DNA of 64,000 nucleotides from Octopus sinensis (Eukaryota), in assembly GCF_006345805.1 (NCBI RefSeq), contig NC_042997.1, forward strand, positions 125,984,001 through 126,048,000, in the 5' to 3' direction. The position numbers and the translations under genes were made by a program. Below the pieces are notes generated by a model. It saw nothing but the letters and a program-made list of their open reading frames with translations. It was not told the origin of the DNA and made no database searches. Below are positions 26,416-50,420 of the stretch, piece by piece (position 1 is the first letter of the stretch; each line of letters opens with the position of its first letter).

Positions 26416-26451
26416 ATATTCTCTCTCTCGTTTATTTCCTCATGTTCAATT

Positions 26452-27522: not shown

Positions 27523-27586
<64 letters not shown>

Positions 27587-27751
27587 TTCATTTTTGGATT
27601 TGGGTTGCAAGATTCTTTATGTGAATTCATGTGTTGAAGCATATTCTGTTTGTGTATGGGGAGAGTCATTCTCTTTTAGTGCCTTATAATTTAACACACT
27701 CACCAGTAAAATTTCCACTCATTTACTTATTTATTTTTCTAAAATTATTGC

Positions 27752-27800
<49 letters not shown>

Positions 27801-29352: not shown

Positions 29353-29364
29353 CACTATCTGTTT

Positions 29365-29410
<46 letters not shown>

Positions 29411-30602: not shown

Positions 30603-30647
<45 letters not shown>

Positions 30648-30776
30648 TAAAAAGAATTCCAACCTTGTCTGATTTTCACGTTTTATTTACAATCTTATAA
30701 TGATATATTATAAGATAATATATTATAATTGAATAAAATAAAATGAAATAGTAGAATGTTAAATATTCATTCTGAT

Positions 30777-30821
30777 TGAACTAGTACTTTCATGCATTGA
30801 ATTCTGCAATCTTCGGGTTCA
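30777..30821 (-). ncRNA. Minimal type-I hammerhead motif, C4 variant
   Basis: TGAAC-CCGAAGA-TTGCA(GAATTCAA)TGCAT-GAA-AGTACT-A/GTTCA. Confidence 0.55.
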
Positions 30822-30924
30822 TGTAGTAGTGTTGACAGTCATGCTTCACAATTTTTGACTGTATATATATATATATGAAAAAACAAGTCAAAATAGAAAA
30901 TGCTAAAATAATTTTATAAAGAAC

Positions 30925-30970
30925 ATTTCAGTACCGGTTTCGGTCATTTTGAGACCTTTTCAACTGTAAC
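30925..30970 (-). ncRNA. Minimal type-I hammerhead ribozyme motif, U3-A8 variant
   Basis: GTTACAG-TTGAAAA-GGTC(TCAAAAT)GACC-GAA-ACCGGT-A/CTGAAAT: stem I, core, stem II, palindromic stem III, GUA cleavage triplet. Confidence 0.7.
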
Positions 30971-31754
30971 GATTAAATAATTAAATTTAGAAAATTAGAA
31001 GAAAAGTTTTTTTAAAAGAATATTTGTATAGTGTTCAAATATAAGTGGCATTCTGCCTTTCTCTGTCTCCCTTGTTTGCACTTGTGTGTTCGAGGTCATA
31101 TATATATATATAATTATTACCTGTGAAACTACACAAGCCATTCAAAGATTTAGAGTTTTGTGCAACAGCAATTACCAAACTAGTTCAGAAATTACATACT
31201 GCTTGTGTGTGTGTGTGTGCGTGTGTGTGTGTGCGCATGCGCGTGTTAGTGTGTGCGTGTACGTGTGTGTGTGAGTAATATTAAATAAATGACAAAGAAT
31301 CAGCTGTTTCTGCTATAAGATGTAGTGCACTCAGAGCTGAGTGTATATGCATCACCTTAGAGCTTCAGCTAAAATACAGAATTCTTATTAAAAGATCTTT
31401 AGAAAATTTGTTGGTATGTTACATGGTAATACAATTTCAAGATTAGCAGACTTGAATGCAAAATAAATGGCACATGAAAGAACCATAGTCTGACAAATCC
31501 ACAAGTTAATTTAGTAAACAGTTGACTAAACAATAAGAAGAGTTAATTACTTAATTAGTGTACAGATGATGGTAATAAAACAAATGAATTGCAACTACAG
31601 CATGTTTTTATAGGCAAAATGACACTCCTAAAATACAACAAATAAAATTATTAGTAAATTAAGTAACAGAGGAAGATGTCAATGTCTAGCACTGGCAGTA
31701 CCATTGTTAAGTAATACAAATGCAAAGAAAATGCCCTAGAAAAAGAAAAGCAAC

Positions 31755-32063
31755 AGAGACATCAAACTGTTGGGCTAGGTTATGAAAGTTACAGAAAATT
31801 TTATTGCAAATCTGATTAAGAACCAGCTTGGCTGAGATGTAGTTTGGTTTGAACCAGAAAAGGTTAGCCATGAGGCCATGTACCTAGTGAGACAACTGCA
31901 AGAAGTTCTTACATAAGAGTAGGCTGCTATACCTAGCATTTGTCAATTTGTAGAAGGCCTAAGAAAACCAGGAGTAGATGACTGGCTTGTAAGGGTCATT
32001 AAAGCCATTCTCAGAAGAGCGGTCAACAAAATGAGAATCAGCAATAAGTTCAGTGATGAATTC
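31755..32063 (+). mobile_element. Decayed RTE RT fragment
   Basis: RDIKLLG*VMKVTE...AMYLVRQLQE...LRKPGVDDWLVRVIKA...KMRISNKFSDEF follows the RTE RT domain order, with stops and deletions. Confidence 0.75.
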
Positions 32064-33222
32064 ATATATATATGACAGGCATCTCACAGTTTCTATTTAC
32101 AAACATAACTCTCAAGGCTTTGGTTCCCCTGAGGCTATAGTAGAAGAAACTTGCCCCTAAGTACCTCAGAGTGGAACTGAAGCTGAAACAATGTCGTTGA
32201 GAAGTCAGCTTCTAAACTACAAAGCCATTACTTCACTCAAAGTCATACATGTGCCTAAATGTCAGTATGTTGTTCATTTTACATCTGTTTTACCATGCTA
32301 GCATGGGTTAGACATGAATATATTTTGAAGCATTGGTTTAAAGTTGGATGCCCTTTCTTTAACTAACCCTTACCAGTTTCACAAGGAAAGGGTCTCTTAT
32401 TTCATGAGTCTTTGAAGGTACAAAGAGAGAGGACAATTTGTTGACAGAAGTGATAACACCAATCATAGCAAATTATTTTCATAAAACAAATATAAAAATC
32501 ACACATATACACACATATACAACAGACTTCTTTCAATTTCCACTCAGAAGGTTTTGATCAACCTAAGGATGTAGGAGAAAATACTTGGTCGGCTAAGGTA
32601 CCACACAGTGGGACTGGATCTGGAATGATGAGATTGGAAAGTGATCTTGGACACATAGTCTTGCCTGCCTATGTTTTCATATCACCATCATCATCATTTA
32701 ACGTCTGTTTTTCATGCTGGCATGGGTTGGATGGCTTGAAAGGAACTGGTAAGGCTGGGAGTTGCACAAGGCTCCATTGTTTTCACATGGTTTCTTCAGC
32801 TGGATGCCCTTCCTAATGCCAACCACTTTACAGGGTGTACTGGGTGCTTTTTACATGGTACCAGCACAGATAGAATCACCAATATGTACCCTAAAACTGA
32901 ACCCGAGACCATGTAATTGAAAAACAAATACCCAATTGACTGGTTTCAAATATGGAAATTTGAATTGAAGTACTTTATTTCTGTAACTGAACTTATTGGG
33001 TGCGGAAACAGCTGTAGGCTGGAATTTCTCTACTGAATTCGAATATCTTTGAATAAATAATGTCTTGTATAATAATGTCAATTTTTCTATTTTCTTCCTT
33101 TTCTCATTCATATATATATCCTCATCATCATCATTTAGTGTCTGCTTTCCATGCTAGCATGGATTGGATGGTTCAACTGGGGTCTGGGAAGCCAGAAGGC
33201 TGCACCAGGCCCAGTCTGAATT

Positions 33223-33310
<88 letters not shown>

Positions 33311-33313
<3 letters not shown>

Positions 33314-35313
33314 TTAACGTCCGCTTTCCATGCTAGCATGGGTTGGACGGTTCAACTGGGGTCTGGGGAGCCCGAAAGCTGCACCAGTCCAGTCAGATCT
33401 GGCAGTGTTTCTACAGCCTGATGCCCTTCCTAACGCCAACCACTCCGAGAGTGTAGTGGGTGATTTTATGTGCCACCGACACAGGTGCCAGACGAGGCTG
33501 GCAGACGGCCACGCTCGGATGGTGTTTTTATGTGCCACCGACACAGGTGCCAGATGAGGCTGGCAAACGGCCACGATCGGATGGTGCTTGTTACGTGCCC
33601 ACAGCACGGAGGCCAGTCGATGCGGTACTGGCTACGGCCACGTTCGGATGGTTTTCTTGTGTGCCACGTGCCACCGGCACTGGTACCACAAAGATACAAA
33701 TTCCATTGATGTTCATCTATTTGATTTGTTTTGATTTTCACTTGCCTCAACAGGTCTTCACAAGTGTCACAAGAAGGAAGGTATGCACAGGTGGACTGAC
33801 TACGTCCCAGGTAGGGGCCATGGGTTATGGCCTGACTAGTCTTGCCGGGTCTTCGGATGGTGTTTTTATGTGCCACCGACACAGGTGCTAGATGAGGCTG
33901 GCGAACGGCCACGATCGGATGGTGTTTGTCATGTGCCCACCGCACTGACTACAGCACTGATGGATTTCTTGTGTGCCACAGGCACTGGTACCACAAGATA
34001 CAAATTCCATTGATGTTCATCTATTTTGTCTATTTTGATTTGATTTGATTTTCACTTGCCTCAACCGGTCTTCACAAGTGTCACAAGAAGGAAGGTATGC
34101 ACAGGTGGACTGACTAGTCTTGCCAGGTCTTCGGAAGGTGTTTTTATGTGCCACCGACACAGGTGCCAGATGAGGCTGGCGAACGGCCATAATCGGATGG
34201 TGTTTGTTACGTGCCCACAGCACGGAGGCCGGTCGATGCGGAACTGGCTACAGCCACGTTCGGATGGTTCTCTTGTGTGCCACCGGCACTGGTACCACAA
34301 AGTGTGTGCCACCGGCACTGGTACCACAAAGATACAAATTCCATTGATATTCATCTATTTGATTTGTTTTGATTTGATTTTGATTTTGATTTTCACTTGC
34401 CTCAACAGGCCTTCACAAGTATCACAAGGAGGAAGGTATGCACAGGTGGACTGACTACGTCCCAGGTAGGGGCCATGGTTTATGGCCTGACTAGTCTTGC
34501 CGGGTCTTCGGATGGTGTTTTTATGTGCCACCGACACAGGTGCTAGATGAGGCTGGCGAACGGCCACGACCGGATGGTGTTTGTTATGTGCCCACAGCAC
34601 GATGGCCAGTGATGCGGTACTGACTACGGCCACGTTCGGATGGATTCTTGTGTGCCACCGGCACTGGTACCACAAGCGGTACTGACTACGGCCACGTTCG
34701 AATGGATTCTTGTGTGCCACCGGCACTGGTACCACAAAGATACAAATTCCATTGATGTTCATCTATTTGATTTGTTTTGATTTGATTTTGATTTTCACTT
34801 GCCTCAACAGGTCTTCACAAGTGTCGCAAGAAGGAAGGTATGTACAGGTGGACTGACTACGTCCCAGGTAGGGCCCACGGGTTATGACCTGACTAGTCTT
34901 GCCGGGTCTTCGGATGGTGCTTTTATGTGCCACCGACACAGGTGCCAGATGCCACCATGTTCCCACAGCACGGAGGCGAGGCGAGTCGATGCGGTACTGG
35001 CTACGGCCACGTTCGGCTGGCTTTCTTGTGTGCCACAGGCACTGGTACCACAAAGATACAAATTCCATTGATGTTCATCTATTTTGATTGATTTTCACTT
35101 GCCTCAGCAGGTCTTCACAAGTGTCACAAGAAGGAAGGTATGCACAGGTGGATCGACTACGTCCCAGGTAGGGGCCACGGGATATGGCCTGACTAGTCCT
35201 GCCGGGTCCTCTCATGCACAGCACACTTCCATAGGACTCGGTCTTCAGTCATTTCCTTGGTGAGACCTAAAGTTCGAAGGTCGTGCTTCACCACCTCGTC
35301 CCAGGTTTTCCTG
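33311..35313 (-). mobile_element. 5'-truncated RTE-family LINE (family A): ORF C-terminus, tandemly amplified 3' UTR, (GAT)n tail
   Basis: The minus strand starts RKTWDEVVKHDLRTLGLTKEMTEDRVLWKCAVHERTRQD*. Then come five units of about 305-410 bp (marker AAGATACAAATTCCATTGAT near 33691, 33995, 34329, 34738, 35053) and the common 3' end ...CATGCTAGCATGGAAAGCGGACGTTAAATGATGAT. Confidence 0.85.
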
Positions 35314-36238
35314 ATATACATATAAATTCAAAACACAGAGAAAAAAAAGAAAAAGAAAAATCATGAGGATGTAGCAGAAGCAATGTATTACTGACACTTG
35401 GTGAAAGAAGAGAGTTGTTCTACACACACACACACACATAGTGTACTGTTCACTTATTGAGATGATTAGCAAAGAAGTTGTCAATTTAGTGAGATAAATA
35501 TCATATAAGAATATAGGAGTTATATGTGAGCTCAAGTTTCATACTAGGGTAGTGCAGTAATCAGACAGGCTTTTATAGTATATCATGCATGATCCATTAA
35601 GACTTACAGAACTGCAAAAGTGGGCAAATAGCAACACTTATGGACTAGTTTGAGAGCATAATGGATAAGCTCAGAACTAAGTTCAAACAGTTTGATATTG
35701 TGGACTTTCACCCTTACAAGATAAAGTAATAAAGTAATAAAGTCTGCCAGAAAATACGTCGCCACTGACCAAACAGATACTGAGTTAATCATGAATGCAC
35801 ATAAAACCTTCCTCTTTAGTAAAGGTTGAGCTTGGATCATGAAATTTGAACCTGACAAAATGTTTTATAGATCAATGTGTGTGTATATATATATGGATCT
35901 ATATTGATATATGTGATCTAATAAGGATTTTTATACAAAATATCTTAAAACTAGCCATAAATGTATTTGTCCACATATGTATTCTCAACATCATTTAACT
36001 TATTTTTTCATGCTGGTATGGCTTGGACAGTTCAATAGAATCCCTAACAAGGTACAAGACTGTACTGAGCTCCAATGTCTGCATTGGCACAATGTACTAG
36101 GTACATTCTTTCATGACACCAACAGTAGTGAGGCCAACAAACAACACATAAAAGAAGGCTCCTTGAAAAAAGTAGGTGTGAGTATTGAAGGATGTAGTTT
36201 TGAGAAGCTAAAGCATGTATGTCACGAGACGATGCTAG

Positions 36239-36377
36239 GTGTGCCACAGTGTAACATGGATGTGATTTTTTTCCCTATACTTTTAATTATATTTTTCGTT
36301 CAAGTGTGCCACAGTGTAACATGGATGTGATTTTTTTCCCTATACTTCTAATTATATTTTTCGTTCAAGTGTGCCAC
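36239..36377. repeat. 65-bp tandem duplication
   Basis: GTGTGCCAC recurs at 36239, 36304 and 36369. Confidence 0.85.
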
Positions 36378-36680
36378 CAAATTTTGAAAAGAATATAAGT
36401 GTGATGCAAAAATGGTTAAAAAAAGGTTGCCCAGCACTGAGCTAAACTATGATAGACAGACAAGAACAGGAGTGAAATTAGCAGGAATGTTGTATTATAT
36501 TACTCAGAAAACAATTACATTGGATAAACAAAGTTTTTTAACTAATTCAATTTAACTCAATATAATTATATATCACATATATGTAATACATTTGGTGGTG
36601 CTGATCTTCATGAAACAGCTGTAGAGTACAATTAAAGTATTAATTATATGCAAAATTTAAGCTTATATATATATATATAT

Positions 36681-36992
36681 CTCACTATCACTATCATGTG
36701 ACCAACCAGACAATCAGATGTTGTTACACATCGCTGGTCACATTGCGTTCGCATTGTTTTAGCTTTCTAATGACGCCACCCAGCTAGCTAAGAGAGCAGG
36801 CCAACAGAAGAAAGAGTAGGAGAAAGAGTGGTGAAAGAATACAGCAGGGATCACCACCCCCTGCCGGAGCCTCGTGGAGCTTTTTAGGTGTTTTCACTCA
36901 ATAAACACTCACAACGCCCGGTCTGGGAATCAAAACCGCGATCCTGCGACCGCGAGTCCGCTGCCCTAACCACTAGGCCATTGCGTCTCCAC
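36681..36992 (-). mobile_element. SINE with a tRNA-Arg-like head
   Basis: The minus strand begins GTGGAGACGCAATGGCCTAGTGGTTAGGGCAGCGGACTCGCGGTCGCAGGATCGCGGTTTTGATTCCC (A box, TCG at the anticodon position, B box), then non-tRNA body. Confidence 0.8.
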
Positions 36993-36996
36993 ATAT

Positions 36997-37063
<67 letters not shown>

Positions 37064-37471
37064 TTATAAACATACATATATATATATATATACACATATA
37101 AACATACATATATATATATATATATATTAACATATATATGTAAACATATACATATATACACACACAAATATATATACATATATAAACATATATGTATATA
37201 CATATGTACATATATATATATATATATATAGATAGATAGATAGATAGATAGATATTCATATACATGTACATGTGCATATATATATAGATATATATATATA
37301 GATAGATAGAGATAGATATTCATATACATATACATCATCATCATCATCATCATCGTTTAACGTCCGCTTTCCATGCTAGCATGGGTTGGACATGTGTGTA
37401 TATATATATATATACACACATACATATATACATACTTATATATACACATATATACATACATATATATACAT

Positions 37472-37502
<31 letters not shown>

Positions 37503-37510
37503 CACACATA
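36993..37510. repeat. Compound TA/ATAC/ATAG microsatellite field (similar fields at 5790-5925, 26300-26420, 43140-43395 and many shorter ones)
   Basis: Read directly from the sequence. Confidence 0.95.
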
Positions 37511-38425
37511 TATTCCAGGTTTATAATCTTAAGAATATTACTTTTCATGCTCGCATTTTTCTATGTAATCCATGATTTTTCCAGGCATTGCTGCTATAAG
37601 ACAATAATGTGTCAATTACTAATTTAAGATTTTACCTTATGAAATACTGAAAGACAATATTTCAATTTTTCCATGTAAGTGATGATAATATTTAAATTTT
37701 TTTCATGTTTAATTAAAATATATGTTGTGATTGAATTATTTGATATTACTCATCCACACCAAATTAATGGCAGGGATTTTTACCATGGCTCACCAAAAAT
37801 TACAAACAAGACCCCAAAACCATCAGTTACCAGGCTCACCTTAAGTAACCTAATTTTGCAATATCAGGAGGTCACAGGAATTCATTCAACGTAAAAAAAA
37901 AATTCTAATGATTCCAGGATTGAGGGGGGGGGGGGGCACCTAATCTTTTCTGAACCAAATTAAGGGATTTGCAGCATATTAGGTGATCAGGGTACTTGAT
38001 TCCATGCTAAAAATACAATTTTTTATTTTTTTTCTTAGTGAAAATCGTGTGTGATAATATAGAAATTTATCATAATGTTGTTGTTATTTAGCCTCAAATC
38101 AACTGATACTGCAAACCAATCATCAAAGACATTCCAGCCTTTAGCAAACAATCACTTTAGAGATAACCTAGGACATTATATACAATGGGTGTGTGATTTA
38201 GGTAGTAAGATACTTTGGCTTCTATTTTTAGCATGTCGAGCGACCAAGTAGAGGCTCTTTCATTGGTTCGATTGCATGATGAGATTATTTTACACATATA
38301 TGTAATATGTATATATATCATTGGCAGAAGTTAGAGAGTAAGTCAATAGCTAAGTGTTTCATGTATTAGCACTTATCAAACACAAATTTGTCCATTGTCA
38401 TTCTGTAACTTCCGCCGAAATAACT

Positions 38426-38850
38426 TTTAAAATACAAAATTTTGTCAAAAATGTTAAGAGTAAACCCTGTTCTATGTGACACATTCTACCAGTATCGGAA
38501 GTTTGAAAGTGTTTAGTTAAAAAAAATTAATCAAATAATTTGTACGTCTAATTGAATAGATCCGAAATGGATGAAAAGCTCAGTCAACCTCAATGGAATT
38601 TGAACTCAGAAAGTAAAGACAGACGAAACACCACTTCTAAAATACAAAATTTTGTCAAAAGTGTTAAGAGTAAAACCTGTTCTATGTGACACTTTCTACC
38701 AGTATCAGAAGTTTGAAAGTGTTTAGTTTAAAAAAATTAAACTAAATAATCTATACGTCAAAGTCAACCTCAGTGAAATTTGAACTCAAAACATAAAGAC
38801 AGACAATATACCATTAAGCATTTCGCCCAGTGTGCCAATGTTTCTGCCAG
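38426..38850. repeat. Older tandem duplication (period about 210 bp) including a SINE C fragment
   Basis: AAAATACAAAATTTTGTCAAAA...TACGTC occurs twice, each followed by a SINE C piece. Confidence 0.7.
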
Positions 38851-39370
38851 AAATTTTAGAAATATATTCTTTATTCTTATTGCTTAAGTGTTACTCCCTT
38901 ACTTCTTTACTTACTGACATAAAATTTGTTAATACCATTTTACCTCATAACTCTCTTTCTACTAAATTTTGTTCAATGCGACTAGCGATTCTGAATTCCT
39001 CATGCATTTTTCTATCATTTAAGCCTAAGAAAAGTATACTTTTAATTTAAAATTTAAAAATTTATATTAATTGAAGATGAATATTTTCCTTACAGGCTGT
39101 AGATATTTTGATGTAACTTTTTTTCTACTGAACCAAATCTCAAACTATTTATGCCAAAGTGTAGCTGAGGAGGTGTCCTCTTTAAAGCTATTAACAGTTT
39201 GCAATTTAGTTGAGAACTGAATTAGTGATGAAGCTTGGAAGCTGGTGCCGTTGACAAAATGGTGAACTTAAGAATATATTCAACCACTTCAGTGGTTGAA
39301 TGATATATATATATATATCATCATCATCATCATCATCACGTTAAACGATGATGATATATATATATATTAA

Positions 39371-39413
<43 letters not shown>

Positions 39414-39419
39414 CATATA

Positions 39420-39825
39420 TATATCGCTGATGTGGCTGATGACAGTACCGCCTGATTGGCACTCATGCCAGTGGAACATTAAAAGCACCGCCCAAGCGTG
39501 ATCGTTGCCAGGGCCGCTGACTGGCTCCCATAGCAGTCGCACATAAAAACCACAATTCACATGTGATCATTGCCAGCGTTGCCTTATTGGCACATGAAAA
39601 ACATTTGAGCGTGATCATTGCCAGTGCTGCCGGACTGGCTCCGTGAAGGTGGCATGTAAAAGCACCCAATACATTCTCAGAGTGGTTGGCGTTAGAAGGG
39701 CATCCAGCTGTAGAAACTTTGCCAGATCAGATTGGAGCCTAGCGCATCCTTCTGACTCGCCAGTCCTCAGTCAAACCGTTCAACCCATTCCAGCATGGAA
39801 AACGGACATTAAATGACGATGATGA
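39420..39825 (+). mobile_element. RTE family A 3' end
   Basis: UTR subrepeats plus the conserved terminus and GAT tail. Confidence 0.8.
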
Positions 39826-40802
39826 TATATATATATAATTTTATGCCCACTTTCTGTAGTATATACAAAATTGGAACTGAACCAAATGGGGATAGAAATG
39901 CAACATTCACTTTATTAGAACACAATAAACAGATCTTTTTCTCTCCCTCCCCTGTGTGTTTATGTATGTATTAACTTTCACCCTAAACAATGAATATATA
40001 ATACTAATAGTAATTTAATTACAGTAGCAATAGAAAATTATATGACTTCATATCACCACCTATTGTAGAAAGATTTATAATCACGACTCTCATACTTGCT
40101 TGAGAAACATATTCTTCGCATATCTGTTAATTTCTTCCTCTACATGGTCTCCCGATATCTCTAAATACATGACTCTTGAGTTTAAAAAACAAATGGAGAG
40201 AGGGGTAGCTGTTGTTTTTGTTTTTCATTTTTTTTTAATCTACAACTGGCTGAAGACATGGCAAATGAGAGGTGTCAGTGTCAAGCGTTTCAGCAGGTCA
40301 ATCAATGTCACAAAATTACAGACACTTACAAGGTGGCAAGCTGGCAGAACCAATTAGCATGCCGGGCAAAATGCTTAGCAGCATTTCATCTGTCTTTATG
40401 TTCCGTGTTCAAATTTCACTGCAGCCAGCTTTCCCTTTCATCCTTTCGCAGTTGATAAAATAACTACCTGCTTAGTACGAGGTCAATGTAATCAACTTAA
40501 CCCCCACCCATCAAAATTGCCGGCCTTGTGCCAAAATTTGACATCAACATTACAAACACTTATTTTATTGTACTCATGTTAAAAGATCACCTAACTGTAA
40601 AGATATTCAACCAGCACCAGTTCTACCAAGTCTCTTCTCGCAGAGCAGAAATGGCAATTTATACATGCGTTTCCCACAGAAGTATCAACAACGAAAAGGA
40701 AGGAACTGGGAGTTGAACCTACGGTAAACTTTGTATATACAGCAGTATCACACTACCAAATAAATTATTTCTTGTATAGCTATGGTGTTGCAAATTTATT
40801 GG

Positions 40803-41195
40803 TGCAGAAGTGGCTGTGTGGTAAGTAGCTTGCTAACCAACCACATGGTTCCGGGTTCAGTCCCACTGCGTGGGATCTTGGGCAAGTGTCTTCTGCTATA
40901 GCCCCGGGCCGACCAATGCCTTGTGAGTGGATTTGGTAGACGGAAACTGAAAGAAGCCTGTCGTATATATGTATATATATATATATGTATGTGTGTGTGT
41001 TTGTCCCCCTAGCATTGCTTGACAACCGATGCTGGTGTGTTTACGTCCCCGTCACTTAGCGGTTCGGCAAAAGAGACCGATAGAATAAGTACTGGGCTTA
41101 CAAAGAATAAGTTCCGGGGTTGATTTGCTCGACTAAAGGCGGTGCTCCAGTATGGCCGCAGTCAAATGACTGAAACAAGTAAAAGAGTAAAAGAG
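40803..41195 (+). mobile_element. tRNA-derived SINE family B, complete, with internal (TA)/(TG) microsatellite
   Basis: A-box-like TGGCTGTGTGG, B-box-like GGTTCAGTCCC, then CTTGGGCAAGTGTCTT, an internal microsatellite and a GTAAAAGA tail. Confidence 0.85.
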
Positions 41196-43137
41196 GGATT
41201 TTTATGTTTAACGTCTTTTTCCGGTAATGTGAGAGATCAAAGCTCCACTTATCAACAAGTCCTAAAGAAAAAGGCTATATGTAATTGATACAAGACACTC
41301 CAGAAAATGAGGAAAAGAAGAAACATCTACTTGACCACCATCATCAGCAGCAGCATAATCATCATTTAACATCTGCCTGCCTTGCTGGCATGGGTTGATC
41401 TCTTATAATTCAATTAACATCTAGGATGCATTATTGGAATATTAAATCAAATCTGTGCTTAATTGATAGGCATCCTAACGATAGGCATCAACCCCAGAAA
41501 GATAAAAGACAAAAATTTTCCTTCATGGGATTTGAACTTGGAATGTAGAAGGCCTTAACTAATTATTGCTGATATTTTGTCTGATGTTCTGGTTCTGCCA
41601 ACAGAAGTGAAAACCATTTACTGCTAATTCCTCAAACCAACATAAGTTTATATTGTTTATCTGTAATATTCTTTCACACTCCCAATAAATTTATCTATCT
41701 CATAAAACGGATGGACACAAAAAGAATTAATTTTAATATTTAGAGAATGGACTAAGATTAGGATCAATAAAATTAAATTAGTGGGGAAGAGAAAGAGGGT
41801 GACAGATTAGTGTATGAACGATAATAGTTAATATCACTGTCAATAAGGTTCTGTAAATAATATCTCCAGCTATAAATAAGACTAAATACAAACCAAGAGT
41901 TCTATATGGTCATTCGATCTGCTAGAAATAATAGCCAAATCCCTTTCAAATCACAGCCTTATGTTTGAATTGCATGTAAAGCCACTATATATAAGAATAC
42001 ACCCACTGAACATAGTTCTATAAGTCGTCATGTCAGACAAAAGATGTTGAAGAAGGACAAAGAAGTCAACCACCATTTATGATACCTCACTAATAAATAA
42101 TACTAATATCCTCACAGCCGAAATTTTCATCCAATATGTTTGCTGTTGAAAATAGTATTTATTATTATTTCTAAGCTTTGTCATAAGACCGGCAATTTTG
42201 AGTGGGGTGAGAAGTTGATAACATCGACCGCAGAACTCAACTGGTACTTATTTTATCGACCCTGAAAAAATAAAAGACAAAGTCGACCTCGGCGGAATTT
42301 GAACTCAGAATGTAAAAAGACGAAAGACTAGAGAGAGCTAAGCATTTTGTCCGACACACTAACGATTCTACCAGCTCGCTTTCATAATAATAATAATAAT
42401 AATAATAACAATTGTTTCAAATTTTGCCACAAGGGCAGCCATTTAAGGGATGAGTAAGTGGCATATATCGACCCAAGTGCGTAACTGATACTTGATTTAT
42501 CGACCTCGAAAGGATGAAAGGCAAAGTCGACCTCGGCGGAATTTGAACTCAGAAGGTAACGCTAAGCATTTCGTCCAGCGTGTTAACAATTCTGCCAGCT
42601 CGCCATAATAATAATAATAATAATAACAATGATGATGATATCAGCTCTCCTTCCCTTCACTGTTTCTATCTAAAAAAAAGCAAAAAATCGAAGCCAGGAC
42701 TAGTAAAGGCTATAGGCACAAAACCACACATTTTGGATCGGGGTTACAATCAAATCCAGCACCTCGAGTTTATCGATTTCGATGGATGAATGACAAAATT
42801 TACCGAAACGAGATTTGAACTCCTCAAACATAAAGTAACAAAACTGTAAGATAGGCATCGTCCTCCTCAATCTTTCATTTCAAGTTCTCTGACTACTCTA
42901 CACAAGTACTCGCTTTCAAGAGTACACATACCCCTTTGTCAAATATGTGTCAGTGTGCACTAGGGTAAGTAATTAACTGCAACCTTAGAACCAAAGCAAA
43001 ATTGTTTAGTTCTTTGGGGGCGGGGTTTCAGAATTACATGTTATTTTTCTTGGGTTAGAAATTATAATTTAAAAAAAAAACAGGCTATATCTGACCAATA
43101 TAAACACCGTATTCAATTTTATTTTCATTGATTACTT

Positions 43138-43222
<85 letters not shown>

Positions 43223-44222
43223 GTATATATATGTGTGTATATATATATGTGTATATATATGTGTGTGTGTGTGTATATATATGTGTGTGTGTGTGTGTAT
43301 ATATATATGTGTGTGTGTGTATATATATATATGTGCGTGTGTATATATATATATATATATATGAGACAGAGAGAGACTGGAGAGAGAGAGAGAGCAATCG
43401 TAGATATACAACTAAAAATTTCCATACATAAAACATAATTGAATAAACTAAAAGGGAATGTGTATAGTTGTGTTTTTAATAGCCAGTGTGTGTCTACGAT
43501 AATAACCTGTATCATAGGTTCATGGTCACAAATTAAGAGGGAGTACAGTCGATTATATATCTACCCCGAAAATATGAATGGCAAAGTTTGATGTAAGCAG
43601 GATTTGAACTCAAAACGTAAAGAGGCGTAACATGTCTTAGTTTCAACATTCGATTGCAGATCAAATCGGCTGCAGGAATAGAGGGGGGGAGGGTTACATC
43701 AAAAATTCGCTTCGTAATTTGATGCTGTGCGGCACCTTATGTAAGTGTTCTACTAAAGCTTCGAGCAGATCAAAATTGTGTACGTAAAAATTGGTAGACG
43801 GAAACTTAAGTGGAAGCACGTAGTGGCACCGTTCCTATTCTTGGGGTAGATTGAATTCGTTACTAGATTTAATACTCCCACCTGAGTAGAGTCTGTTCCG
43901 TTGCAAGCATTCGGGCCAGATGTCCGGTTCCCCTACCTCCCACCAGGAACGGAGACTCCAAAAAGCGCTATGGGCAGCGTTCTACTTCTAAACCTTAAAA
44001 AGAATCGCATTAAAAAAATTTCGCAGAAAGAAAGGACATGAAGAAACAATTGTAAAAGTTTACTTGAATTTGGATATATCACCAAGTATTTGCAACATGG
44101 ATGAAAAACCATTGAACGAGGTACACACACACACAGTGAAAGAGAGAAAGATAAGTAGATAAAAAGACAGAAGAGAGAGTTAAGTCAATCTGCCACACTT
44201 CATTCATCATAAGGACATATAA

Positions 44223-44393
44223 GTGGGGTGATGTCCTCAATCAAGATTTTGGGAAGTCCGATTGAGTAATCGAGGTAAGAGCGGTGTGAACTATGATGTT
44301 GGGAGTGGTGGCAGTGGACAGGTAAGCGCATGAAAAAAAGGTGTGTAGTAGAATGTTGGTGACAAATGTAGACGTGGTGTGATTGGTGGGCGG
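44223..44393 (-). promoter_or_regulatory. Intronic SRE / NF-Y / Sp1 motif cluster
   Basis: On the minus strand: ATCACCCCAC (44232-44223, exact SRE-1), TTCACACCGC (44290-44281), ATCACACCAC (44383-44374), an overlapping CCAAT (44386-44382) and a GC box GGGCGG (44388-44393). Confidence 0.65.
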
Positions 44394-45192
44394 TCAGGTA
44401 GGACATGGTAAAATTATAGGCACGATATGATGGTTACTTTGGATCTGTAATGGATCAGTTCCAAGTGAATCCAGTCATTGTTTGTTGATACACATACAAT
44501 CATACCAAACCAGAAAAGGAGCCCTGAAGCCGTCACTCGAATTACTAGAAATAACAGCCAAATTAATCTTTAATCACAGATTATGTGGGTCTCGAAAAAA
44601 ATTTTTTTTTCTGAAAAACAGGATGTTCATGGATGGAATGTTTTTGATCTTAAGCCTCCTAGGTCAGCGTTGACCTGGAGCTAAATAACATCAACACAAT
44701 GTATTTGGAAGTTGGAGTGGTAGTAGTACACTATGCATATTTGTGTGATATGTCAATTTATCAGCTTCTAATAAATGGGATGCACATGTTTAGCGCGCAC
44801 TTACCACTTAGTGATGACTCGTTTAAGACAGAGCAGAGTTTGGTGTTTTTGTTGCAAAACACGATCACTTAGATTGAACAGAGTTACGATTAAAAGGCGT
44901 TGCAATTATGATCATCCTATTGTCTTCAAAGCATAGTTTACCCCTGACTATATTATCCTTTCGGTCTTTAATACGTATTTTTTAAAGAGAGGGTGGTTTG
45001 AGGGAGAATTAGCTGCTATTTTTGTAGGTCTAGTGACCTGATAGTGGCTCTCCATTGGATCGACATCGACAGAGTTAAAGATCCAGGTAATTCTCTGAAT
45101 GTTTGTGCAAGTACCATTCTACAGACTGATGCTACCATAAAGTTTCATTGCAATCACAAACGATATAAAGTAACAATACATCTAAAACATAC

Positions 45193-45237
<45 letters not shown>

Positions 45238-45798
45238 TATATATACGCGCACATACAAGCAGTATACATATTAGAATACAGTATGATGCAATTAGATTTG
45301 TTATAACGGTAACATGGAGCCAACATACATATACATACACACACACATATATATATTATATGTATGTATGTGTGTATATATATATATATGTGTGTGTGTG
45401 TATATATATATATATATAGTGGGTGTGTGTGTGTGTGTATGTATGAATGTTTACTTGGATGTATCTATCAAATAAAATTATGTACGTGTCTATCAACATT
45501 AAACATGTCAGTCTACTATATAGTATGTGGAGAACAGTTTATTGGCATTAGTACACTCATTGATATAATCAAAACAAGCACTGGTCGTTACATTTTACAT
45601 CAGTATACAAAAACAACTACATAAGGTTATCGAAATGTCGAATGGCAGGTGATCCCCGATATCGTAACCACCGTGTGTTACTGAGTGATGTGGTGTGTGG
45701 GTTTGTGTGTGTTTATGTGCGTGTGTGGACGCAAAAGCAGCAGCAATGACAATGGTACCGTAATGTCAATGACGGACAACAATACTACAAGCACTTAC

Positions 45799-45910
45799 CA
45801 TCAAGACCGTTTAGCAAGACATTATCGAGATCGGACGATGTAGTAAGGTCCGGCCCTAAATCGGGCAAAGAATCCGAAGAGATGTATAACCACCTCTGCG
45901 AGTCTGCCAT
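45799..45910 (-). CDS. SREBF: SREBP coding exon 1 (acidic activation segment), MADSQRWLYISSDSLPDLGPDLTTSSDLDNVLLNGLD + G
   Basis: Not in the ORF track. ATG at 45910 in context CAAAGATGGCA, 37 open codons rich in D/L/S, then a consensus donor G|GTAAGT (phase 1). It joins the phase-1 acceptor at 11036 to give ...GLD-D-MIKY, matching the phase-1 D-I-E-D|M junction of vertebrate SREBP exons 1 and 2. Confidence 0.85.
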
Positions 45911-45932
45911 CTTTGTTGTTCAGTGAAGCTTC

Positions 45933-45961
45933 AACTAACGCCACGAGACGTCAGCCAATCA
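45933..45961 (-). promoter_or_regulatory. Proximal motifs upstream of the SREBP ATG: CCAAT box, CRE-like site, Inr-like TTAGTT
   Basis: AGCCAATCA at 45953-45961, GACGTCA at 45947-45953, AACTAA (TTAGTT on the minus strand) at 45933-45938. The TSS is not known. Confidence 0.45.
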
Positions 45962-46374
45962 ACACACGTCTTTACCATCGGATGATATTTCGTCATCACA
46001 GCTGCCGCTCTTGTTTCTACCACTGCCCCTGCTGCCGCGGCTCTGTCTCTCTGTCTCTCTTTCTCTCTCTCTCATTTTCTCTCTCTCTTTCTCTCTCTCG
46101 CTCTCTCTCTCTCTCTGTCTCACTCTTTTTTCCTCTACCCTGTTTAATTTGTATATATATTTATATATAAATTCTTATGTATATATATATATATATATAT
46201 ATAATTTATAAACGTGTGACAGAAATAACTATAGATATCATTACATATGTGTGTGTGTGTGTGCTTATAGCTGTGTATAGTGTATATAAATGTGTGTGAC
46301 TGTGTGCGCGTGTGAGTGTATATATGTGTGTGTGTGTCTGTTAACTCCCACCACACCTTGGAGCTATTGGTAAC

Positions 46375-46545
46375 AACCCGTTAACGACTTGCTATCGTCA
46401 CTTCCGCTCCGGTTACGTTTTATCCGGTTGCGCGGGTTTTGTCTCCCGTAAATATTGATTTACTTTGAGCTGACATATAACCAATCATATTATACAGTCA
46501 TATAGTCAAAGCCAGTTATATTATCGGTGCTTATTCCATTGGTAC
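46375..46545. promoter_or_regulatory. CpG-rich putative upstream promoter segment
   Basis: Local CpG enrichment, ETS-type ACTTCCG at 46400-46406, CCAAT at 46481-46485 and ATTGG at 46538-46542. Confidence 0.4.
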
Positions 46546-47282
46546 CAGGCAAATAAAAGACAATATCATCTCCAGTTTGGACTGAATTATAAACCGAGAG
46601 TAGCTAAACTAAATATTAAGTTATCTAGTGTGGCTCTGATACAACTGAGATGGGAAGTGGTCCTAAACAGGTTCCATTTATGAGTGAACAACTGACGTGA
46701 AAATGGATGAGCCATAGAACTGGTAGACGAGTGAATGACGGGAATAAAACCTGAGTGATGATATTTTTGTTGTGTTGTTTCCTTTGCATCCATAATCAAA
46801 TTTATGACCCCCTAAATGAGAAACATTGAAGGAAGGGGATTGTTGGTTTTATTGGCCAGAATATGGATCTGAAGTTAATTAAACAACTTAATTCATCTTC
46901 TTCCAAAGAGATGACACCCCAAGTAGTTTCCGGTTGGGTATGAAATTTGAACCTACATACCGCATTCTTGTGCCCAAATCTTTACCGTTTCTGTTATCCA
47001 ACGAGCCCACATCATACAATCCCACATCTTGTGGGAAGACTACACTCGAACAAATCGGTTACAGTGCTTGGCTAATATTTATTATAAGGATTGCCTTATT
47101 GATTTTAAAAGGCAAAGTTCACTATCTGTGGGATTTGAATGTAATGTTACTACCTACCATAAGATATTTTATCCATCCTCCCACGTTCGATCGTCGATTA
47201 CTCATCAAGCATCATAATGAGAAGGCGGATTTAAAATTAAACGGACGCTATTTAATTTTACCAGTCCATATTAACTTTAGAT

Positions 47283-47847
47283 CAGGACTGGCCAACTTGA
47301 GGCCCGCGGCTCGCAGACTTTTATCTTGCGGCGCGCTTAATACTTTCTTGAAATGGGTTTATTTTTAACAAACATTTTTTAAAATTTATCAAAAATTATT
47401 AAAGATCCTAATGAAAAGTAAAAAAGAAAGATACTACTGTTTTTGCAACGATAATATATTTCTTTACAACCCACAAGGGGCTAAACGTAGAGGGGACAAA
47501 CAAGGACAGACAAAGGGATTAAGTCGATTATATCGACCCCGGGGCGAAACTGGTACTTTATCGACCCCGAAAGGATGAAAGGCAAAGTCGACCTCGGCGG
47601 AATTTGAACTCAGAATGTAACGACAGACGAAATACAGCTAAGCATTTCGCCCGGCGCGCTAACGTTTCTGCCAGCTCGCCGCCTTTTGCAAGGATATTTC
47701 ATGTCGAATCAACGACCGCTCATTCATTATTGTAATAATAGCATGAAAAAGGAAAGCGATTTTAATTCTGTCAGTATACAAGTGGCCTTCAACAAAACTT
47801 TCTGTAATTAAAGTGGCCTGCAATGTTATTCGAGTTGGCCACGCCTG
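47283..47847. mobile_element. hAT-type MITE
   Basis: TIRs CAGGACTGGCCAAC / GTTGGCCACGCCTG, with a degenerate 8-bp TSD CTTTAGAT / CTTGAGAC. Confidence 0.7.
47463..47683 (-). mobile_element. tRNA-derived SINE family C, nested in a hAT MITE
   Basis: Head GGCGGCGAGCTGGCAGAAACG, B-box-like GAGTTCAAATTCC, body GTCGACTTTGCCTTTCATCCTTTCGGGGTCGATAAA. Confidence 0.85.
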
Positions 47848-50420
47848 CTTGAGACCATTTCATATAATTGGTTTTGTATGAAACCTATGTACGAAGGAAA
47901 CATCCGACAGTTTGGAATCAGTTATAAAGTGTTATAAGTTGTGATGTACTTATAAATCAATTATAAGTGCATTACAAACTTAGATAAGAAGACATTACAG
48001 ACAGAATAAAAGCTGAAGGATTCCTGTCGTTAGAACTCAGGACACAAAAACTTTATCACTGTGGACGAAATCTTGCAGAGTTCTTTGATTATATGTCAAT
48101 TATAAAGCATGCTGGAAAAAGTATATGTAACATCAGAACTGTAACGGTTAGTGTTTGTGTCCTCTTCATTGTTTAGTAGTAAACACAGAGAGATAGAATG
48201 ATGTTGTAAGAGAACAGAATTAGAGCTAGAGAGAATTGTAGGGTGTTGTCTCACAGTTGCTTTCTCCCTCTGACCAAAGTTCTAGCTGGTCAACCAGACT
48301 TCGTTGAGTAGTCACGACTGTGATGAACTGCTTTTTGCTTGGGATATGCTTGCTTATATAAAGATCCAGAAGGATAGATATATCATTGAGAACAATAGAT
48401 TTAGTTGGTGGTCTTGTTATCTATTCTAGCTTTTGGTGAAGTAGAAGAGGTTAGAAAGGGTCAAGTAGTGAAGACATTATTTCGGCCTAGCTAAAGGCAT
48501 CTGGAAAATGTAAAGCTGCTGTCAGAGAAAAACCATTATTCCACCGTGGGAAAAGTTCTGTGCAGTGTTAATTTAAATTTGGCTATGGTGGATCGAATCT
48601 ACTTCATGCATGCAAGATTCGCTACAGAACTGATATAATAAGGAGCACAGTAAACACTGATGTCAAAAACTAAAGAACATTCACCTGCAAGCTTATTAGC
48701 ATAGCTAATAGCAAAACACAACCAAATACTGGTTACCAAAGGAGTCAAATCCAACAGTGGATAGGAGGAGCACACAGATGTTTTCATATCGCCATAAGGC
48801 ATTCAAAATGAGAATGGAACTAGATGAGAATAATTATTGAAGTGGTCATAAAAACACTATAATGGTTACAGATTCAGTAATTATTACTGTTGTAAGGAAA
48901 ACAGATTAATTAGGTTGTGTACATGATAGCTAAGCAATTATTCATAAAATATATTTCCTCTGTTAACTGTTTAACCAGGTAAACTGGTGAGATAAATAGA
49001 AAATTTTATATCAAACTAGACAACATAACTGGGAGCATAACTTTGTAATTTCAGGAGAATAGGGAAAGTCAATTCTAGTTCTCAACTAGGTGAAAGCCAA
49101 AGTGGAATTTGAACTCAGAATGTAAAGCCAGACTAAATGCTGCTGAGCATTTTGCGTGGCATGCTAAAAATTTCGCAAGCTTGCTGCCTTAGGAAATATA
49201 GATATTTGTTTCAAATTTTCGCACAAGGCCAGCAATTTCGGGGAAGGGGATAAGTCAATTGCAGCTACCCCAGTGCTCAACCGGTACTTATTTTATCGAT
49301 CCCAAAAGGATGAAAGGCAAGGTTGACCTCAGCAGAATTTGAACTCAGAATGTAAAAATGGATGAAATGCCACTAAGCAATTTGTCTGACATGCTAATGA
49401 TTCTGCTAGCTTGCCACCTAAAAGAAGTGCCATCTTCAAGAACACAACGCTTTGACTGGTTCAGGAATCAAACGCAAGTCCTTATAATCATAATCCTAAC
49501 ACCATACTCTCTTGGCTGCACATGTTTATGTAAGAAGTATAAATATTACTTAACTAATGTGCTGCTGTTATTTGTTGGGTATCTAGGACCACATTATCTA
49601 ATTTGCAATTTCTGTTTATTGAGATGAAATTTTACTGCTATTTTTATATATTGAATAACCACATTGTGAAGGCTGGTGTTTCAGACCAGACTGTCCAATA
49701 AGTCATGTATGTTAGGTTGCATGACAGGCAGCATCTTGTCAGTCATCTAGTCCCACTTCTGATAAACTGGTGCTTTAAAAAAAATCTCAAAGGTTAATTA
49801 CTTAGGGGTGCCATTCACCTGAAAGATAATAGTGAAATTAACGTTAATATATTTAATGTGGTAAGCGCAAAAAATCTAATGAAAATGTGTATGGTGAGAA
49901 AAGGATATTTGCAAAATTTTAACAATGATTAAAATAATATTAATCATTGAGATAATGTCTTTTTCCTTACTAATTAGATTTTTAATGCTACTTATATTAA
50001 ATATAATTAACACTAACTTTCTATAAATAGTTACAATTGGAAAATATAAAGCCAAGTCAATTGGCATAGTCATTAGGACATCAGATAGAATTCATTGCAA
50101 TATTTGTTGCGGCTCTAAGGCAGCAGGCTGGCAGAAACATTAGCATGCCTGGCGAAATGCTTGGCAGCATTTTGTCTGTCTTTACGTTCTGAGTTCAAAT
50201 TCTGCCTAGGTCAACTTTGCATTTCAACCTTTTGGAGTCAATAAATTAAGTACCAGTTGTATACTGGGGTCAATCTAATCGACTGGCCCCTCCTCCAAAA
50301 TTTCGGGCCTTGTGCCTAGAGTAGAAAAGAATATTTGTTGGGGCTCTGTATCGTGAGTAAAAATCCTGCCATGGTCATCTTTGCCATTCATCCTTTCTGC
50401 AGTCAATAAAGTGCTGGTAC

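What the first reader, a model, noticed from the sequence alone, without database searches (positions are those of the whole stretch)
44223..44393. Sterol-regulatory element cluster inside SREBP intron 1: candidate feed-forward autoregulation
Seen: within 171 bp of apparently unique sequence about 1.4-1.6 kb downstream of exon 1, all in gene orientation, are an exact ATCACCCCAC, ATCACACCAC, TTCACACCGC, a CCAAT overlapping the upstream SRE and an adjacent GC box. A hand estimate at about 35 percent GC gives roughly 0.04 expected exact ATCACCCCAC hits in the whole window. Known: SRE-1 is ATCACCCCAC (consensus TCACNCCAC), SREBPs need NF-Y or Sp1 as partners, and mammalian SREBP-2 and SREBP-1c promoters are autoregulated by such modules. 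Inference: a mollusc SREBP autoregulatory enhancer or alternative promoter. Splicing from a non-coding alternative first exon could start translation at the exon 2 ATG and give a short activation domain, analogous to SREBP-1c.
Basis: partly seen in the sequence, partly recalled or inferred. Interest (0 to 1): 0.75.

Follow-up and report, generated by a model that had tools for sequence, protein, structure and literature searches.

The report
SRE-like motif cluster in SREBP intron
The sterol-response-like DNA words are really there, 1.4-1.6 kb inside the first intron of an SREBP gene, but they are only modestly more than chance and could not be checked in other cephalopods. The part of the gene that is demonstrably conserved, and matches the known self-regulating SREBF2 promoter, is a different 55-bp block just upstream of the start codon.

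Summary
Observation confirmed. On the gene (-) strand lie ATCACCCCAC (44223-44232, the only copy in the window), TTCACACCGC (44281-44290) and ATCACACCAC (44374-44383). A CCAAT (44382-44386) overlaps the last by 2 nt, and a GC box follows at 44388-44393. The cluster is 1405-1575 bp into the 34.8-kb intron 1 of a bona fide SREBP gene.

Statistics are modest once the local G-rich, C-poor composition is kept. P is about 0.10 for the exact 10-mer and 0.01-0.02 for a same-strand consensus pair within 200 bp anywhere in the window. The stretch is unique within the window and lies in a 6-kb domain around exon 1 where CpG is not depleted.

Against a canonical module: only one site is strong, and it has no CCAAT or GC box within 150 bp. 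The one CCAAT overlaps its SRE. No SRE occurs in intron 1 of two other lophotrochozoan SREBP genes. No cephalopod sequence could be retrieved, so the decisive conservation test was not possible.

Unexpected result: the proximal promoter (45941-45995) carries TGACGAA-2nt-ATCATCCGAT-16nt-GATTGG-6nt-TCTCGTGG. This block is conserved with near-identical spacing in Lingula, another lophotrochozoan, amphioxus and a tick. It is position-homologous to the CRE-SRE-CCAAT core of frog and catfish SREBF2 promoters.

Verdict: autoregulation through the intronic cluster is possible (about 0.25-0.3) but unproven. The promoter block is the better candidate.

The parts
44223..44232 (-). Exact SRE-1 word ATCACCCCAC, followed directly by TTATATG (44222-44216). 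No CCAAT or GC box within 150 bp.
44281..44290 (-). Degenerate SRE-like word TTCACACCGC, one mismatch to TCACNCCAC. It fits a T-box half-site (TTCACACCT) equally well.
44374..44383 (-). SRE-consensus word ATCACACCAC (TCACNCCAC with N=A).
44382..44386 (-). CCAAT (TGATTGG on the + strand, a good NF-Y core). It overlaps the SRE-like word by 2 nt.
44388..44393 (-). GC box CCGCCC (GGGCGG on the + strand).
45799..45910 (-). SREBP coding exon 1 (MADSQRW...LLNGLD, phase 1, donor GATG|GTAAGT).
11037..45798 (-). Intron 1 (34.8 kb). Exon 2 starts at 11036 with G|AT ATG ATA (DMIKYI).
45941..45995 (-). Deeply conserved proximal promoter block. It comprises TGACGAA (45995-45989), ATCATCCGAT (45986-45977), GATTGG (45960-45955) and TCTCGTGG (45948-45941).
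42001..48000 (.). CpG-preserved domain around exon 1. Observed/expected CpG is 0.63-1.09 on unique sequence here, against about 0.05-0.35 in the gene body.
4203..5227 (-). bHLH-Zip exons 4 and 5 ([21 protein letters not shown]...[18 protein letters not shown]) that identify the gene.

Best explanation
The 171-bp stretch is ordinary promoter-proximal intron sequence. It is G/T-rich on the + strand and carries a weak ~50-bp internal duplication. One perfect SRE-1 word and two weaker SRE-like words co-occur there largely by chance. It is not the conserved control element of this gene, and at most it gives auxiliary, lineage-specific SREBP or NF-Y binding.

What is shown: the motifs exist, their statistics are modest, and they lie in a CpG-preserved domain. 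The demonstrably conserved cis-module of the gene is the 55-bp block at -31 to -85 from the ATG (45941-45995). That block has the same parts, order and nearly the same spacing as the CRE-SRE-inverted-CCAAT core of vertebrate SREBF2 promoters.

What is inferred: if this SREBP feeds forward on its own transcription, it most likely does so through that promoter block, with NF-Y on GATTGG and a bZIP factor on TGACGAA.
For: - Composition-aware nulls give P = 0.10 for the exact 10-mer and 0.01-0.02 for the pair. The local composition is G66/C16, and there is a weak internal repeat.
- The other exact TCACCCCAC in intron 1 (42202) is a variant of the G-rich edge of a SINE-like repeat. This shows how such words arise here by chance.
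- Only the first site matches the strict consensus, and it has no CCAAT or GC box within 150 bp. The only CCAAT shares 2 nt with its SRE.
- There is no TCACNCCAC, even with 1 mismatch, in the promoter or intron 1 of L009, the closest relative obtained. Lingula has none in intron 1 and no promoter hit apart from TCACTCCAT at -875, which lies inside the neighbouring gene.
- A spider promoter SRE abutting a CCAAT is not kept in a second spider.
- The two-motif pattern found 8 unrelated metagenome contigs by chance.
- The strict form of the promoter block occurs only at SREBP promoters in 318 kb searched, and a looser form only there in 478 kb. It aligns with frog and catfish SREBF2.
Against: - The pair statistic is still nominally significant. 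Six of 34 hits with at most 1 mismatch fall in the 44-46 kb bin, and five of those are in gene orientation.
- The hypothesis is a natural single prior for this gene, not one of thousands.
- The cluster lies in the CpG-preserved, presumably unmethylated, domain where regulatory elements are expected.
- The proximal promoter has no strict SRE (ATCATCCGAT has 3 mismatches to TCACNCCAC), which leaves room for a lineage-specific SRE elsewhere.
- The introns of the two lophotrochozoan comparators are 0.7-0.8 kb and very distant, so absence there says little about cephalopods.
Confidence: 0.5

Rival explanations
1. The cluster is a functional SREBP-responsive enhancer. Nuclear SREBP binds ATCACCCCAC and ATCACACCAC, helped by NF-Y and/or Sp-family factors at 44382-44393. 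This raises transcription of its own gene in a feed-forward loop.
For: - It contains an exact SRE-1 plus a consensus site in the same orientation within 160 bp.
- P is about 0.01-0.02 window-wide and 0.003 locally.
- It is the densest bin of SRE-like words in the window.
- It is unique in the window and lies inside the CpG-preserved domain.
- The SREBP basic-region Tyr that allows SRE reading is conserved.
- SREBP-1c activates its own promoter through an ATCACCCCAC-containing SRE complex with NF-Y and Sp1 (PMC2582599; PMC3639327).
Against: - The strong site has no partner site.
- The CCAAT overlaps its SRE, so NF-Y and SREBP would probably compete for it.
- The second and third sites are weak.
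- Conservation is untested, and no SRE occurs in the two lophotrochozoan introns examined.
- The SREBF2-type module maps to the promoter instead.
Confidence: 0.25
2. The cluster is an alternative promoter like mammalian SREBF1 exon 1c. Transcription would start about 30 bp downstream of ATCACCCCAC-TTATATG. A non-coding first exon would splice to exon 2, and translation would start at the exon 2 ATG, giving a protein that begins MIKYIYPDG.
For: - A TATA-like TTATATG abuts the SRE-1 word.
- Exon 2 begins G|AT ATG, in frame.
- That Met sits inside the DM(L/I)xxI motif that binds MED15 and CDK8 in fly SREBP (PMC9702540), so such an isoform would have a truncated activation domain.
- Donor-like GT sites exist downstream (CAG|GTGGGA near 43880, GAG|GTAGGG near 43937).
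Against: - There is no transcript, CAGE or EST evidence of any kind.
- Donor-like sites of this quality are expected by chance in any 700 bp.
- Nothing comparable is seen in the other invertebrate loci.
- The frog SREBF1 intron 1 has no SRE cluster either.
Confidence: 0.07
3. The cluster is a regulatory element read by other factors. Candidates are T-box proteins (GGTGTGA at 44283 and 44376, AGGTGTGT at 44339), KLF/Sp factors (CACCCC, GGGCGG) and NF-Y. It would be part of a general promoter-proximal enhancer unrelated to SREBP.
For: - TCACACC occurs 5 times in the window, and 2 of these are 93 bp apart here.
- TTCACACCGC fits the T-box half-site as well as it fits the SRE.
- There is a good NF-Y core and a GC box.
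- The cluster lies in the CpG-preserved domain.
Against: - TCACACC is not enriched window-wide (5 observed, 7.3 expected).
- These motifs are short and as chance-prone as the SRE reading.
- There are no conservation data.
Confidence: 0.15

Closest known systems
Mammalian SREBF1 exon-1c promoter 'SRE complex' (SRE ATCACCCCAC + E-box + NF-Y + Sp1), which lies inside intron 1 of the 1a transcript
   Same: It has the same 10-mer. CCAAT and GC-box words are nearby. It is located downstream of the first coding exon of an SREBP gene. Exon 2 could supply a start codon (PMC2582599).
   Different: - In the mammalian complex the sites sit side by side within about 35 bp next to a mapped start site.
- Here the perfect SRE has no partner within 150 bp, and the CCAAT overlaps the weaker SRE.
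- There is no E-box in 42-48 kb and no evidence of a start site.
- The frog SREBF1 intron 1 shows no such cluster, so the 1c arrangement is not ancestral.
Vertebrate SREBF2 proximal promoter (SRE-1 + inverted CCAAT/NF-Y; sterol-dependent autoregulation, Sato et al. 1996, from own knowledge)
   Same: The window's promoter block at 45941-45995, not the intronic cluster, has the same order and spacing. The layout is TGACG(T/A)A, 2 nt, a 10-mer at the SRE position, 16-17 nt, then GATTGG (frog L018, catfish L016).
   Different: - At the SRE position the window and other invertebrates read ATCAYCCGAT, where the frog has GTCACACCAC and the catfish ATCAGACCAC.
- The downstream TCTCGTGG box lies 6 nt after the CCAAT in invertebrates and 14 nt after it in vertebrates.
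- Binding of SREBP to ATCAYCCGAT is unknown.
LDL-receptor SRE-1 (repeat 2) flanked by Sp1 sites
   Same: It has the identical 10-mer ATCACCCCAC followed by a TATA-like sequence.
   Different: No Sp1 or GC box adjoins the 10-mer here, and the site is intronic rather than at -60 of a mapped promoter.
T-box half-site clusters (TCACACCT)
   Same: Two TCACACC cores and one ACACACCT lie within 100 bp.
   Different: None is a full consensus or a palindrome. This reading is as unsupported as the SRE reading.

Membership tests
SREBP gene (bHLH-Zip, membrane-bound) | bHLH-Zip with Tyr replacing the conserved Arg in the basic region (HNAIEKRYR) | tested here: met
   ORF translations 5012-5491 and 4038-4346. 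tblastn with Lingula SREBP. Best hits are SREBPs, E = 2.8e-44.
SREBP gene (bHLH-Zip, membrane-bound) | Acidic N-terminal activation domain with a DM(L/I)xxI motif split at the exon 1/2 junction | tested here: met
   MADSQRW..SSDSLPDLG...LD|DMIKYI aligns with Lingula and amphioxus N-termini.
SRE/NF-Y/Sp1 composite SREBP-response module | At least one match to TCACNCCAC / ATCACCCCAC | tested here: met
   Exact 10-mer at 44223. Consensus 9-mer at 44374.
SRE/NF-Y/Sp1 composite SREBP-response module | A separate NF-Y or Sp1 site beside the SRE (adjacent, not overlapping) | tested here: not met
   Nearest CCAAT or GC box to the perfect SRE is 150 bp away. The CCAAT at 44382 shares 2 nt with the SRE-like word, and the GC box follows 1 nt after the CCAAT.
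SRE/NF-Y/Sp1 composite SREBP-response module | More motif matches than chance allows | tested here: inconclusive
   P = 0.10 (10-mer), 0.01-0.02 (pair, window-wide) and 0.003 (local). All are post hoc.
SRE/NF-Y/Sp1 composite SREBP-response module | Conservation in orthologous loci | tested here: inconclusive
   No cephalopod locus was retrievable. The motifs are absent from intron 1 of two distant lophotrochozoans.
SRE/NF-Y/Sp1 composite SREBP-response module | SREBP binding and SREBP- or lipid-dependent activity | not testable with these tools
   Needs EMSA, DAP-seq or ChIP, and reporter assays.
Alternative first exon / promoter (SREBF1 exon-1c type) | Mapped transcription start and an exon spliced to exon 2 | not testable with these tools
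   No transcript data. Only a TATA-like word and generic donor-like sites are present.
Alternative first exon / promoter (SREBF1 exon-1c type) | A usable in-frame start codon in the shared exon 2 | tested here: met
   ttttcag|AT ATG ATA AAA at 11036-11025.
SREBF2-type proximal promoter core (CRE-like, SRE position, inverted CCAAT) | Same parts, order and spacing as in vertebrate SREBF2 promoters | tested here: met
   Applies to 45941-45995, not to the intronic cluster. Alignments A2 and A3 and pattern scans.
   No other copy in the 64-kb window. No related sequence in metagenome contigs. The genome itself is not available.

The most novel reading that the evidence does not exclude
There are two linked readings.

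(a) Cephalopods evolved, independently of mammals, an intron-1 SRE/NF-Y/Sp element. It could even be an exon-1c-like alternative promoter, and it would give SREBP a second, feed-forward input.

(b) The 55-bp CRE-[SRE-position]-CCAAT-TCTCGTGG promoter block is an ancestral bilaterian SREBP control module, over 550 million years old. It became the sterol-responsive SRE/NF-Y core of vertebrate SREBF2. That would make it one of the deepest conserved promoter architectures known and would make the origin of SREBP autoregulation testable.

The probability given is for (a). Conservation of the block in (b) is already shown; only its function is open.
Probability: 0.25. Interest if true: 0.6.

Novelty: new member of a known kind. 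Interest (0 to 1): 0.4.

Why it matters
If the intronic cluster works, it would extend SREBP self-activation to molluscs. That loop is so far shown in mammals and fungi. It would also suggest convergent evolution of an intron-1 control point like mammalian SREBF1c. This would be useful but not surprising to specialists.

The by-product matters more. An SREBP promoter core is shared, almost base for base in spacing, by a cephalopod-like genome, a brachiopod, amphioxus and a tick. It is aligned part for part with frog and catfish SREBF2. This pinpoints where ancestral control of the lipid master regulator sits. It also gives a short, concrete element (ATCAYCCGAT versus TCACNCCAC) on which to test when and how sterol-type autoregulation arose.

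Tried and rejected
- **Cephalopod orthologues.** Three protein searches found none. These were the N-terminus plus bHLH, human SREBP-2, and a 1097-aa chimeric query built after noticing that hits are limited to about 0.55-1.75x the query length. Exact look-up of 10 ORFs around the cluster found none in the collection. The exon 1 peptide was too short for the search for related loci.
- **Metagenome scan.** A scan for the two-motif pattern gave 8 contigs with no other similarity to the window, so these are chance hits.
- **Hidden repeat, RNA gene or coding sequence.**
  - Self-BLAST shows the cluster is unique in the window.
  - There are no Rfam families or tRNAs.
  - The 68-aa ORF across the cluster and its neighbours have no Pfam match.
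- **Cluster as an inverted partial copy of the promoter NF-Y region.** The shared AGACGTG.GTG.TGATTGG scores P about 0.017 in one orientation. Rejected as too weak.
- **15-mer shared with L009.** AAAAAAAGGTGTGTA is shared with intron 1 of L009, but in the opposite orientation relative to the gene and with P about 0.03. Treated as chance.
- **SRE next to CCAAT in a spider SREBP promoter (-101).** It is not kept in a second spider, so it gives no support for a general rule.
- **Conserved upstream ORF as an explanation for the promoter block.** Rejected, because amphioxus has a 1-nt shorter spacer that shifts the frame.
- **Literature.** Nothing was found on cephalopod or mollusc SREBP cis-elements, or on the block's sequences. 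Hits to TCTCGTGG were Nextera adapters or primers.

Full report
**What is in the sequence.** All are on the - strand.
- ATCACCCCAC lies at 44223-44232.
- TTCACACCGC lies at 44281-44290.
- ATCACACCAC lies at 44374-44383.
- CCAAT lies at 44382-44386. It reads TGATTGG on the + strand and shares two bases with the preceding word.
- CCGCCC lies at 44388-44393.

The exact 10-mer is unique in the window. The consensus TCACNCCAC occurs four times, all on the - strand, at 22585, 42202, 44223 and 44374.

**The gene.** The - strand carries an SREBP gene.
- Exon 1 runs from the ATG at 45910 to 45799, with donor GATG|GTAAGT.
- Exon 2 starts at 11036 after ttttcag and reads G|AT ATG ATA (DMIKYI).
- Glutamine-rich exons follow.
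- The bHLH-Zip exons at about 5227-5018 and 4322-4203 carry [16 protein letters not shown], which includes the SREBP-specific tyrosine.

Database hits are SREBPs; the best is Lingula at E = 2.8e-44. The exon 1 peptide aligns with the N-termini of Lingula and amphioxus SREBP, so it is the true first coding exon. Intron 1 is 34.8 kb, and the cluster lies 1405-1575 bp inside it. The source organism could not be named. The closest sequences obtained are lophotrochozoan.

However, the 171 bp are strongly skewed (G66 A45 T44 C16 on the + strand) and contain a weak 47-57-bp internal duplication. Shuffling within 200- or 500-bp blocks keeps local composition and gives these values.
- The expected number of TCACNCCAC hits is 2.0, against 4 observed (P = 0.14).
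- P = 0.10 for at least one exact 10-mer.
- P = 0.010-0.018 for a same-strand pair within 200 bp anywhere in the window.

Within the stretch itself, P(at least 2) = 0.003. With one mismatch allowed, 6 of 34 hits fall in the 44-46 kb bin, the maximum of 32 bins. The enrichment is therefore real but modest, and it was found post hoc.

Two controls show how easily such words arise by chance. The TCACCCCAC at 42202 is a variant of the G-rich edge of a SINE-like repeat whose other copies read GGGGAAGGGG and similar. The two-motif pattern also matched eight metagenome contigs that share nothing else with the window.

**Context.**
- The stretch has no second copy in the window, no Rfam or tRNA match and no protein-family signal.
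- The window is strongly CpG-depleted, with a median observed/expected ratio of 0.34 and a gene body at 0.05-0.35. The exception is a 6-kb domain at 42-48 kb centred on exon 1, where the ratio is 0.63-1.09 even after removing repeats. The cluster itself scores 0.97. This is the signature of a germline-unmethylated promoter region and a favourable place for a regulatory element. It is a property of the whole domain, not of the cluster.
- A relative (L009) shows the same CpG island, only about 1 kb wide.

**Anatomy against the canonical module.** In known SREBP-responsive promoters the SRE sits beside, not on top of, an NF-Y or Sp1 site. The SREBP-1c 'SRE complex' holds ATCACCCCAC, an E-box, NF-Y and Sp1 within about 35 bp (PMC2582599; PMC3639327). 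This cluster differs in four ways.
- The perfect SRE has no CCAAT or GC box within 150 bp.
- The only CCAAT overlaps the weaker SRE-like word, so NF-Y and SREBP would probably compete.
- No E-box (CACGTG) occurs anywhere in 42-48 kb.
- Two of the three words contain TCACACC, which is also the T-box half-site core. Two of the five copies of that core in the window lie here.

**Comparative evidence.** The decisive test, conservation in other cephalopods, could not be run. Ten SREBP loci from other animals were fetched instead.
- L009: an unidentified lophotrochozoan, the closest relative obtained, with 78% amino-acid identity in exon 4
- L010: Lingula
- L011: amphioxus
- L012 and L017: two spiders
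- L013: a tick
- L015: a beetle
- L014: frog SREBF1
- L016 and L018: catfish and frog SREBF2

In L009 neither the promoter nor intron 1 contains a TCACNCCAC, even with one mismatch. In Lingula intron 1 has none, and the only promoter-side hit, TCACTCCAT at -875, lies inside the neighbouring gene. These introns are only 0.7-0.8 kb long. One spider has ATCACACCAC abutting TGATTGG at -101, but the second spider does not keep it. An intronic SRE cluster is therefore not an old feature of SREBP genes. If this one is functional, it is lineage-specific.

**The unexpected result.** The same comparison exposed a deeply conserved proximal promoter. In the window, at -85 to -31 from the ATG (45995-45941, - strand), the sequence reads TGACGAA-at-ATCATCCGAT-16 nt-GATTGG-6 nt-TCTCGTGG.
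- The same blocks, with the same or 1-nt different spacers, lie just upstream of the SREBP ATG in Lingula, L009, amphioxus and the tick. In the tick the 10-mer reads ATCACCCGAT.
- A strict pattern for the block occurs only at these five promoters in 318 kb searched. A looser one occurs only at SREBP promoters in 478 kb.
- Frog and catfish SREBF2 promoters have the same architecture. The frog reads TGACGTA-gt-GTCACACCAC-17 nt-GATTGG-14 nt-TCTCATTG. The catfish reads TGACGTA-ct-ATCAGACCAC-17 nt-GATTGG-14 nt-TCTCGCGA.
- The 10-mer that is a consensus SRE in the frog is thus position-homologous to ATCAYCCGAT in invertebrates.
- From my own knowledge, the SRE plus inverted CCAAT of the human SREBF2 promoter mediates its sterol-dependent autoregulation (Sato et al. 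1996), and CRE + SRE + CCAAT is also the layout of the HMG-CoA synthase and reductase promoters.
- A conserved upstream ORF is excluded as the explanation, because the amphioxus spacer shifts the frame.

Whether SREBP binds ATCAYCCGAT is unknown; it has three mismatches to TCACNCCAC in the window.

**Mechanism and probabilities.**
- The most likely reading (about 0.5) is that the intronic cluster is a fortuitous grouping of SRE-like words in GT-rich promoter-proximal intron, with at best auxiliary binding. The gene's conserved control, including any feed-forward loop, would then run through the promoter block.
- A genuine SREBP-responsive intronic enhancer remains possible (about 0.25).
- An exon-1c-like alternative promoter is a further stretch (about 0.07). 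Its prerequisites exist on paper. A TATA-like TTATATG follows the SRE, and exon 2 has an in-frame ATG that falls inside the DM(L/I)xxI motif shown to bind MED15 and CDK8 in fly SREBP (PMC9702540). No transcript evidence is available.
- An element read by T-box, KLF/Sp or NF-Y factors is about as likely as chance motifs allow (about 0.15).

**Novelty and verdict.** An SRE cluster in an SREBP gene would be a new member of a well-known kind of element. It is plausible but unproven, and I score it 0.4. The conserved promoter block is the more valuable lead. I did not find it described in the searchable literature, but that search cannot establish novelty.

Noticed in passing
window 45941-45995 (-); L009 7353-7406; L010 9921-9976; L011 9912-9965; L013 9757-9812; L016 10024-10095; L018 2603-2670: The 55-bp SREBP promoter block TGACG(T/A)A-2nt-ATCAYCCGAT-16nt-GATTGG-6nt-TCTCGTGG is conserved in the window, two other lophotrochozoans, amphioxus and a tick. 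It aligns part for part with the CRE-SRE-CCAAT core of frog and catfish SREBF2 promoters.
   Followed up: partly
window 42001-48000 versus 1-32000: CpG observed/expected is 0.6-1.1 in a 6-kb domain centred on exon 1 and 0.05-0.35 in the gene body. This looks like an unmethylated promoter island in an otherwise methylated gene. L009 shows the same pattern with an island about 1 kb wide.
   Followed up: partly
window 42160-42629, 43552-43623, 47457-47688, 9355-9530, 28645-28793, 49104-49414, 50127-50783, 54791-54982: A CpG-rich SINE-like repeat family (core ...gagttcaaattccgccgaggtcgactttgcctttcatcctttcggggtcgataaa...) has many copies on both strands. Two tandem copies lie at 42204-42629. One copy's G-rich edge supplies the TCACCCCAC at 42202.
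   Followed up: partly
window 44273-44403 (+): Three splice-donor-like words (AGGTAAG at 44273 and 44320, AGGTAGG at 44397) lie on the strand antisense to SREBP. They are associated with a weak 47-57-bp internal duplication (GGTGTGAACTATGATGTTGG / GGTGTGTAGTAGAATGTTGG). No ORF or other sign of an antisense exon was seen.
   Followed up: partly
window 44333-44347 (+) and L009 8231-8245 (+): An identical 15-mer, AAAAAAAGGTGTGTA, occurs in intron 1 of both SREBP genes, but in opposite orientation relative to the gene. Shuffle P is about 0.03, so it is probably chance.
   Followed up: yes
window 59600-63200 (+): A GC-rich (0.5-0.55) block carries long overlapping ORFs that look like a non-LTR retrotransposon. 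They include an endonuclease-like ORF and a 299-aa reverse-transcriptase-like ORF, broken into several frames. It lies upstream of the SREBP gene.
   Followed up: no
window 33000-35100: A GC-rich (0.44-0.50) stretch is almost entirely repeated within the window. It shows recurring ORF peptides on both strands (e.g. ...VFMCHRHRCQMRLANGH...), which suggests a tandem array or nested copies of one element inside intron 1.
   Followed up: no
window 10390-10560 and 7690-8040 (-): Exons 2 and 3 encode long poly-glutamine / Gln-Pro tracts (CAG/CAA runs) between the activation domain and the bHLH. These are much longer than in the Lingula or amphioxus proteins.
   Followed up: no
window 46345-46470 (-): Upstream of the GA, TA and CA microsatellites that precede the promoter block lies a CpG-rich stretch. 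It has ETS-like words (ACCGGATA, GCGGAAGTGACG) and a CCAAT. It could be an upstream promoter or enhancer part, or an alternative start site.
   Followed up: no
L012 4060-4095 and L017 9840-9880: The Araneus SREBP promoter has ATCACACCAC abutting TGATTGG at -101. Stegodyphus keeps TGATTGGTGG but not the SRE word. Neither spider has the strict promoter block found in the tick.
   Followed up: yes
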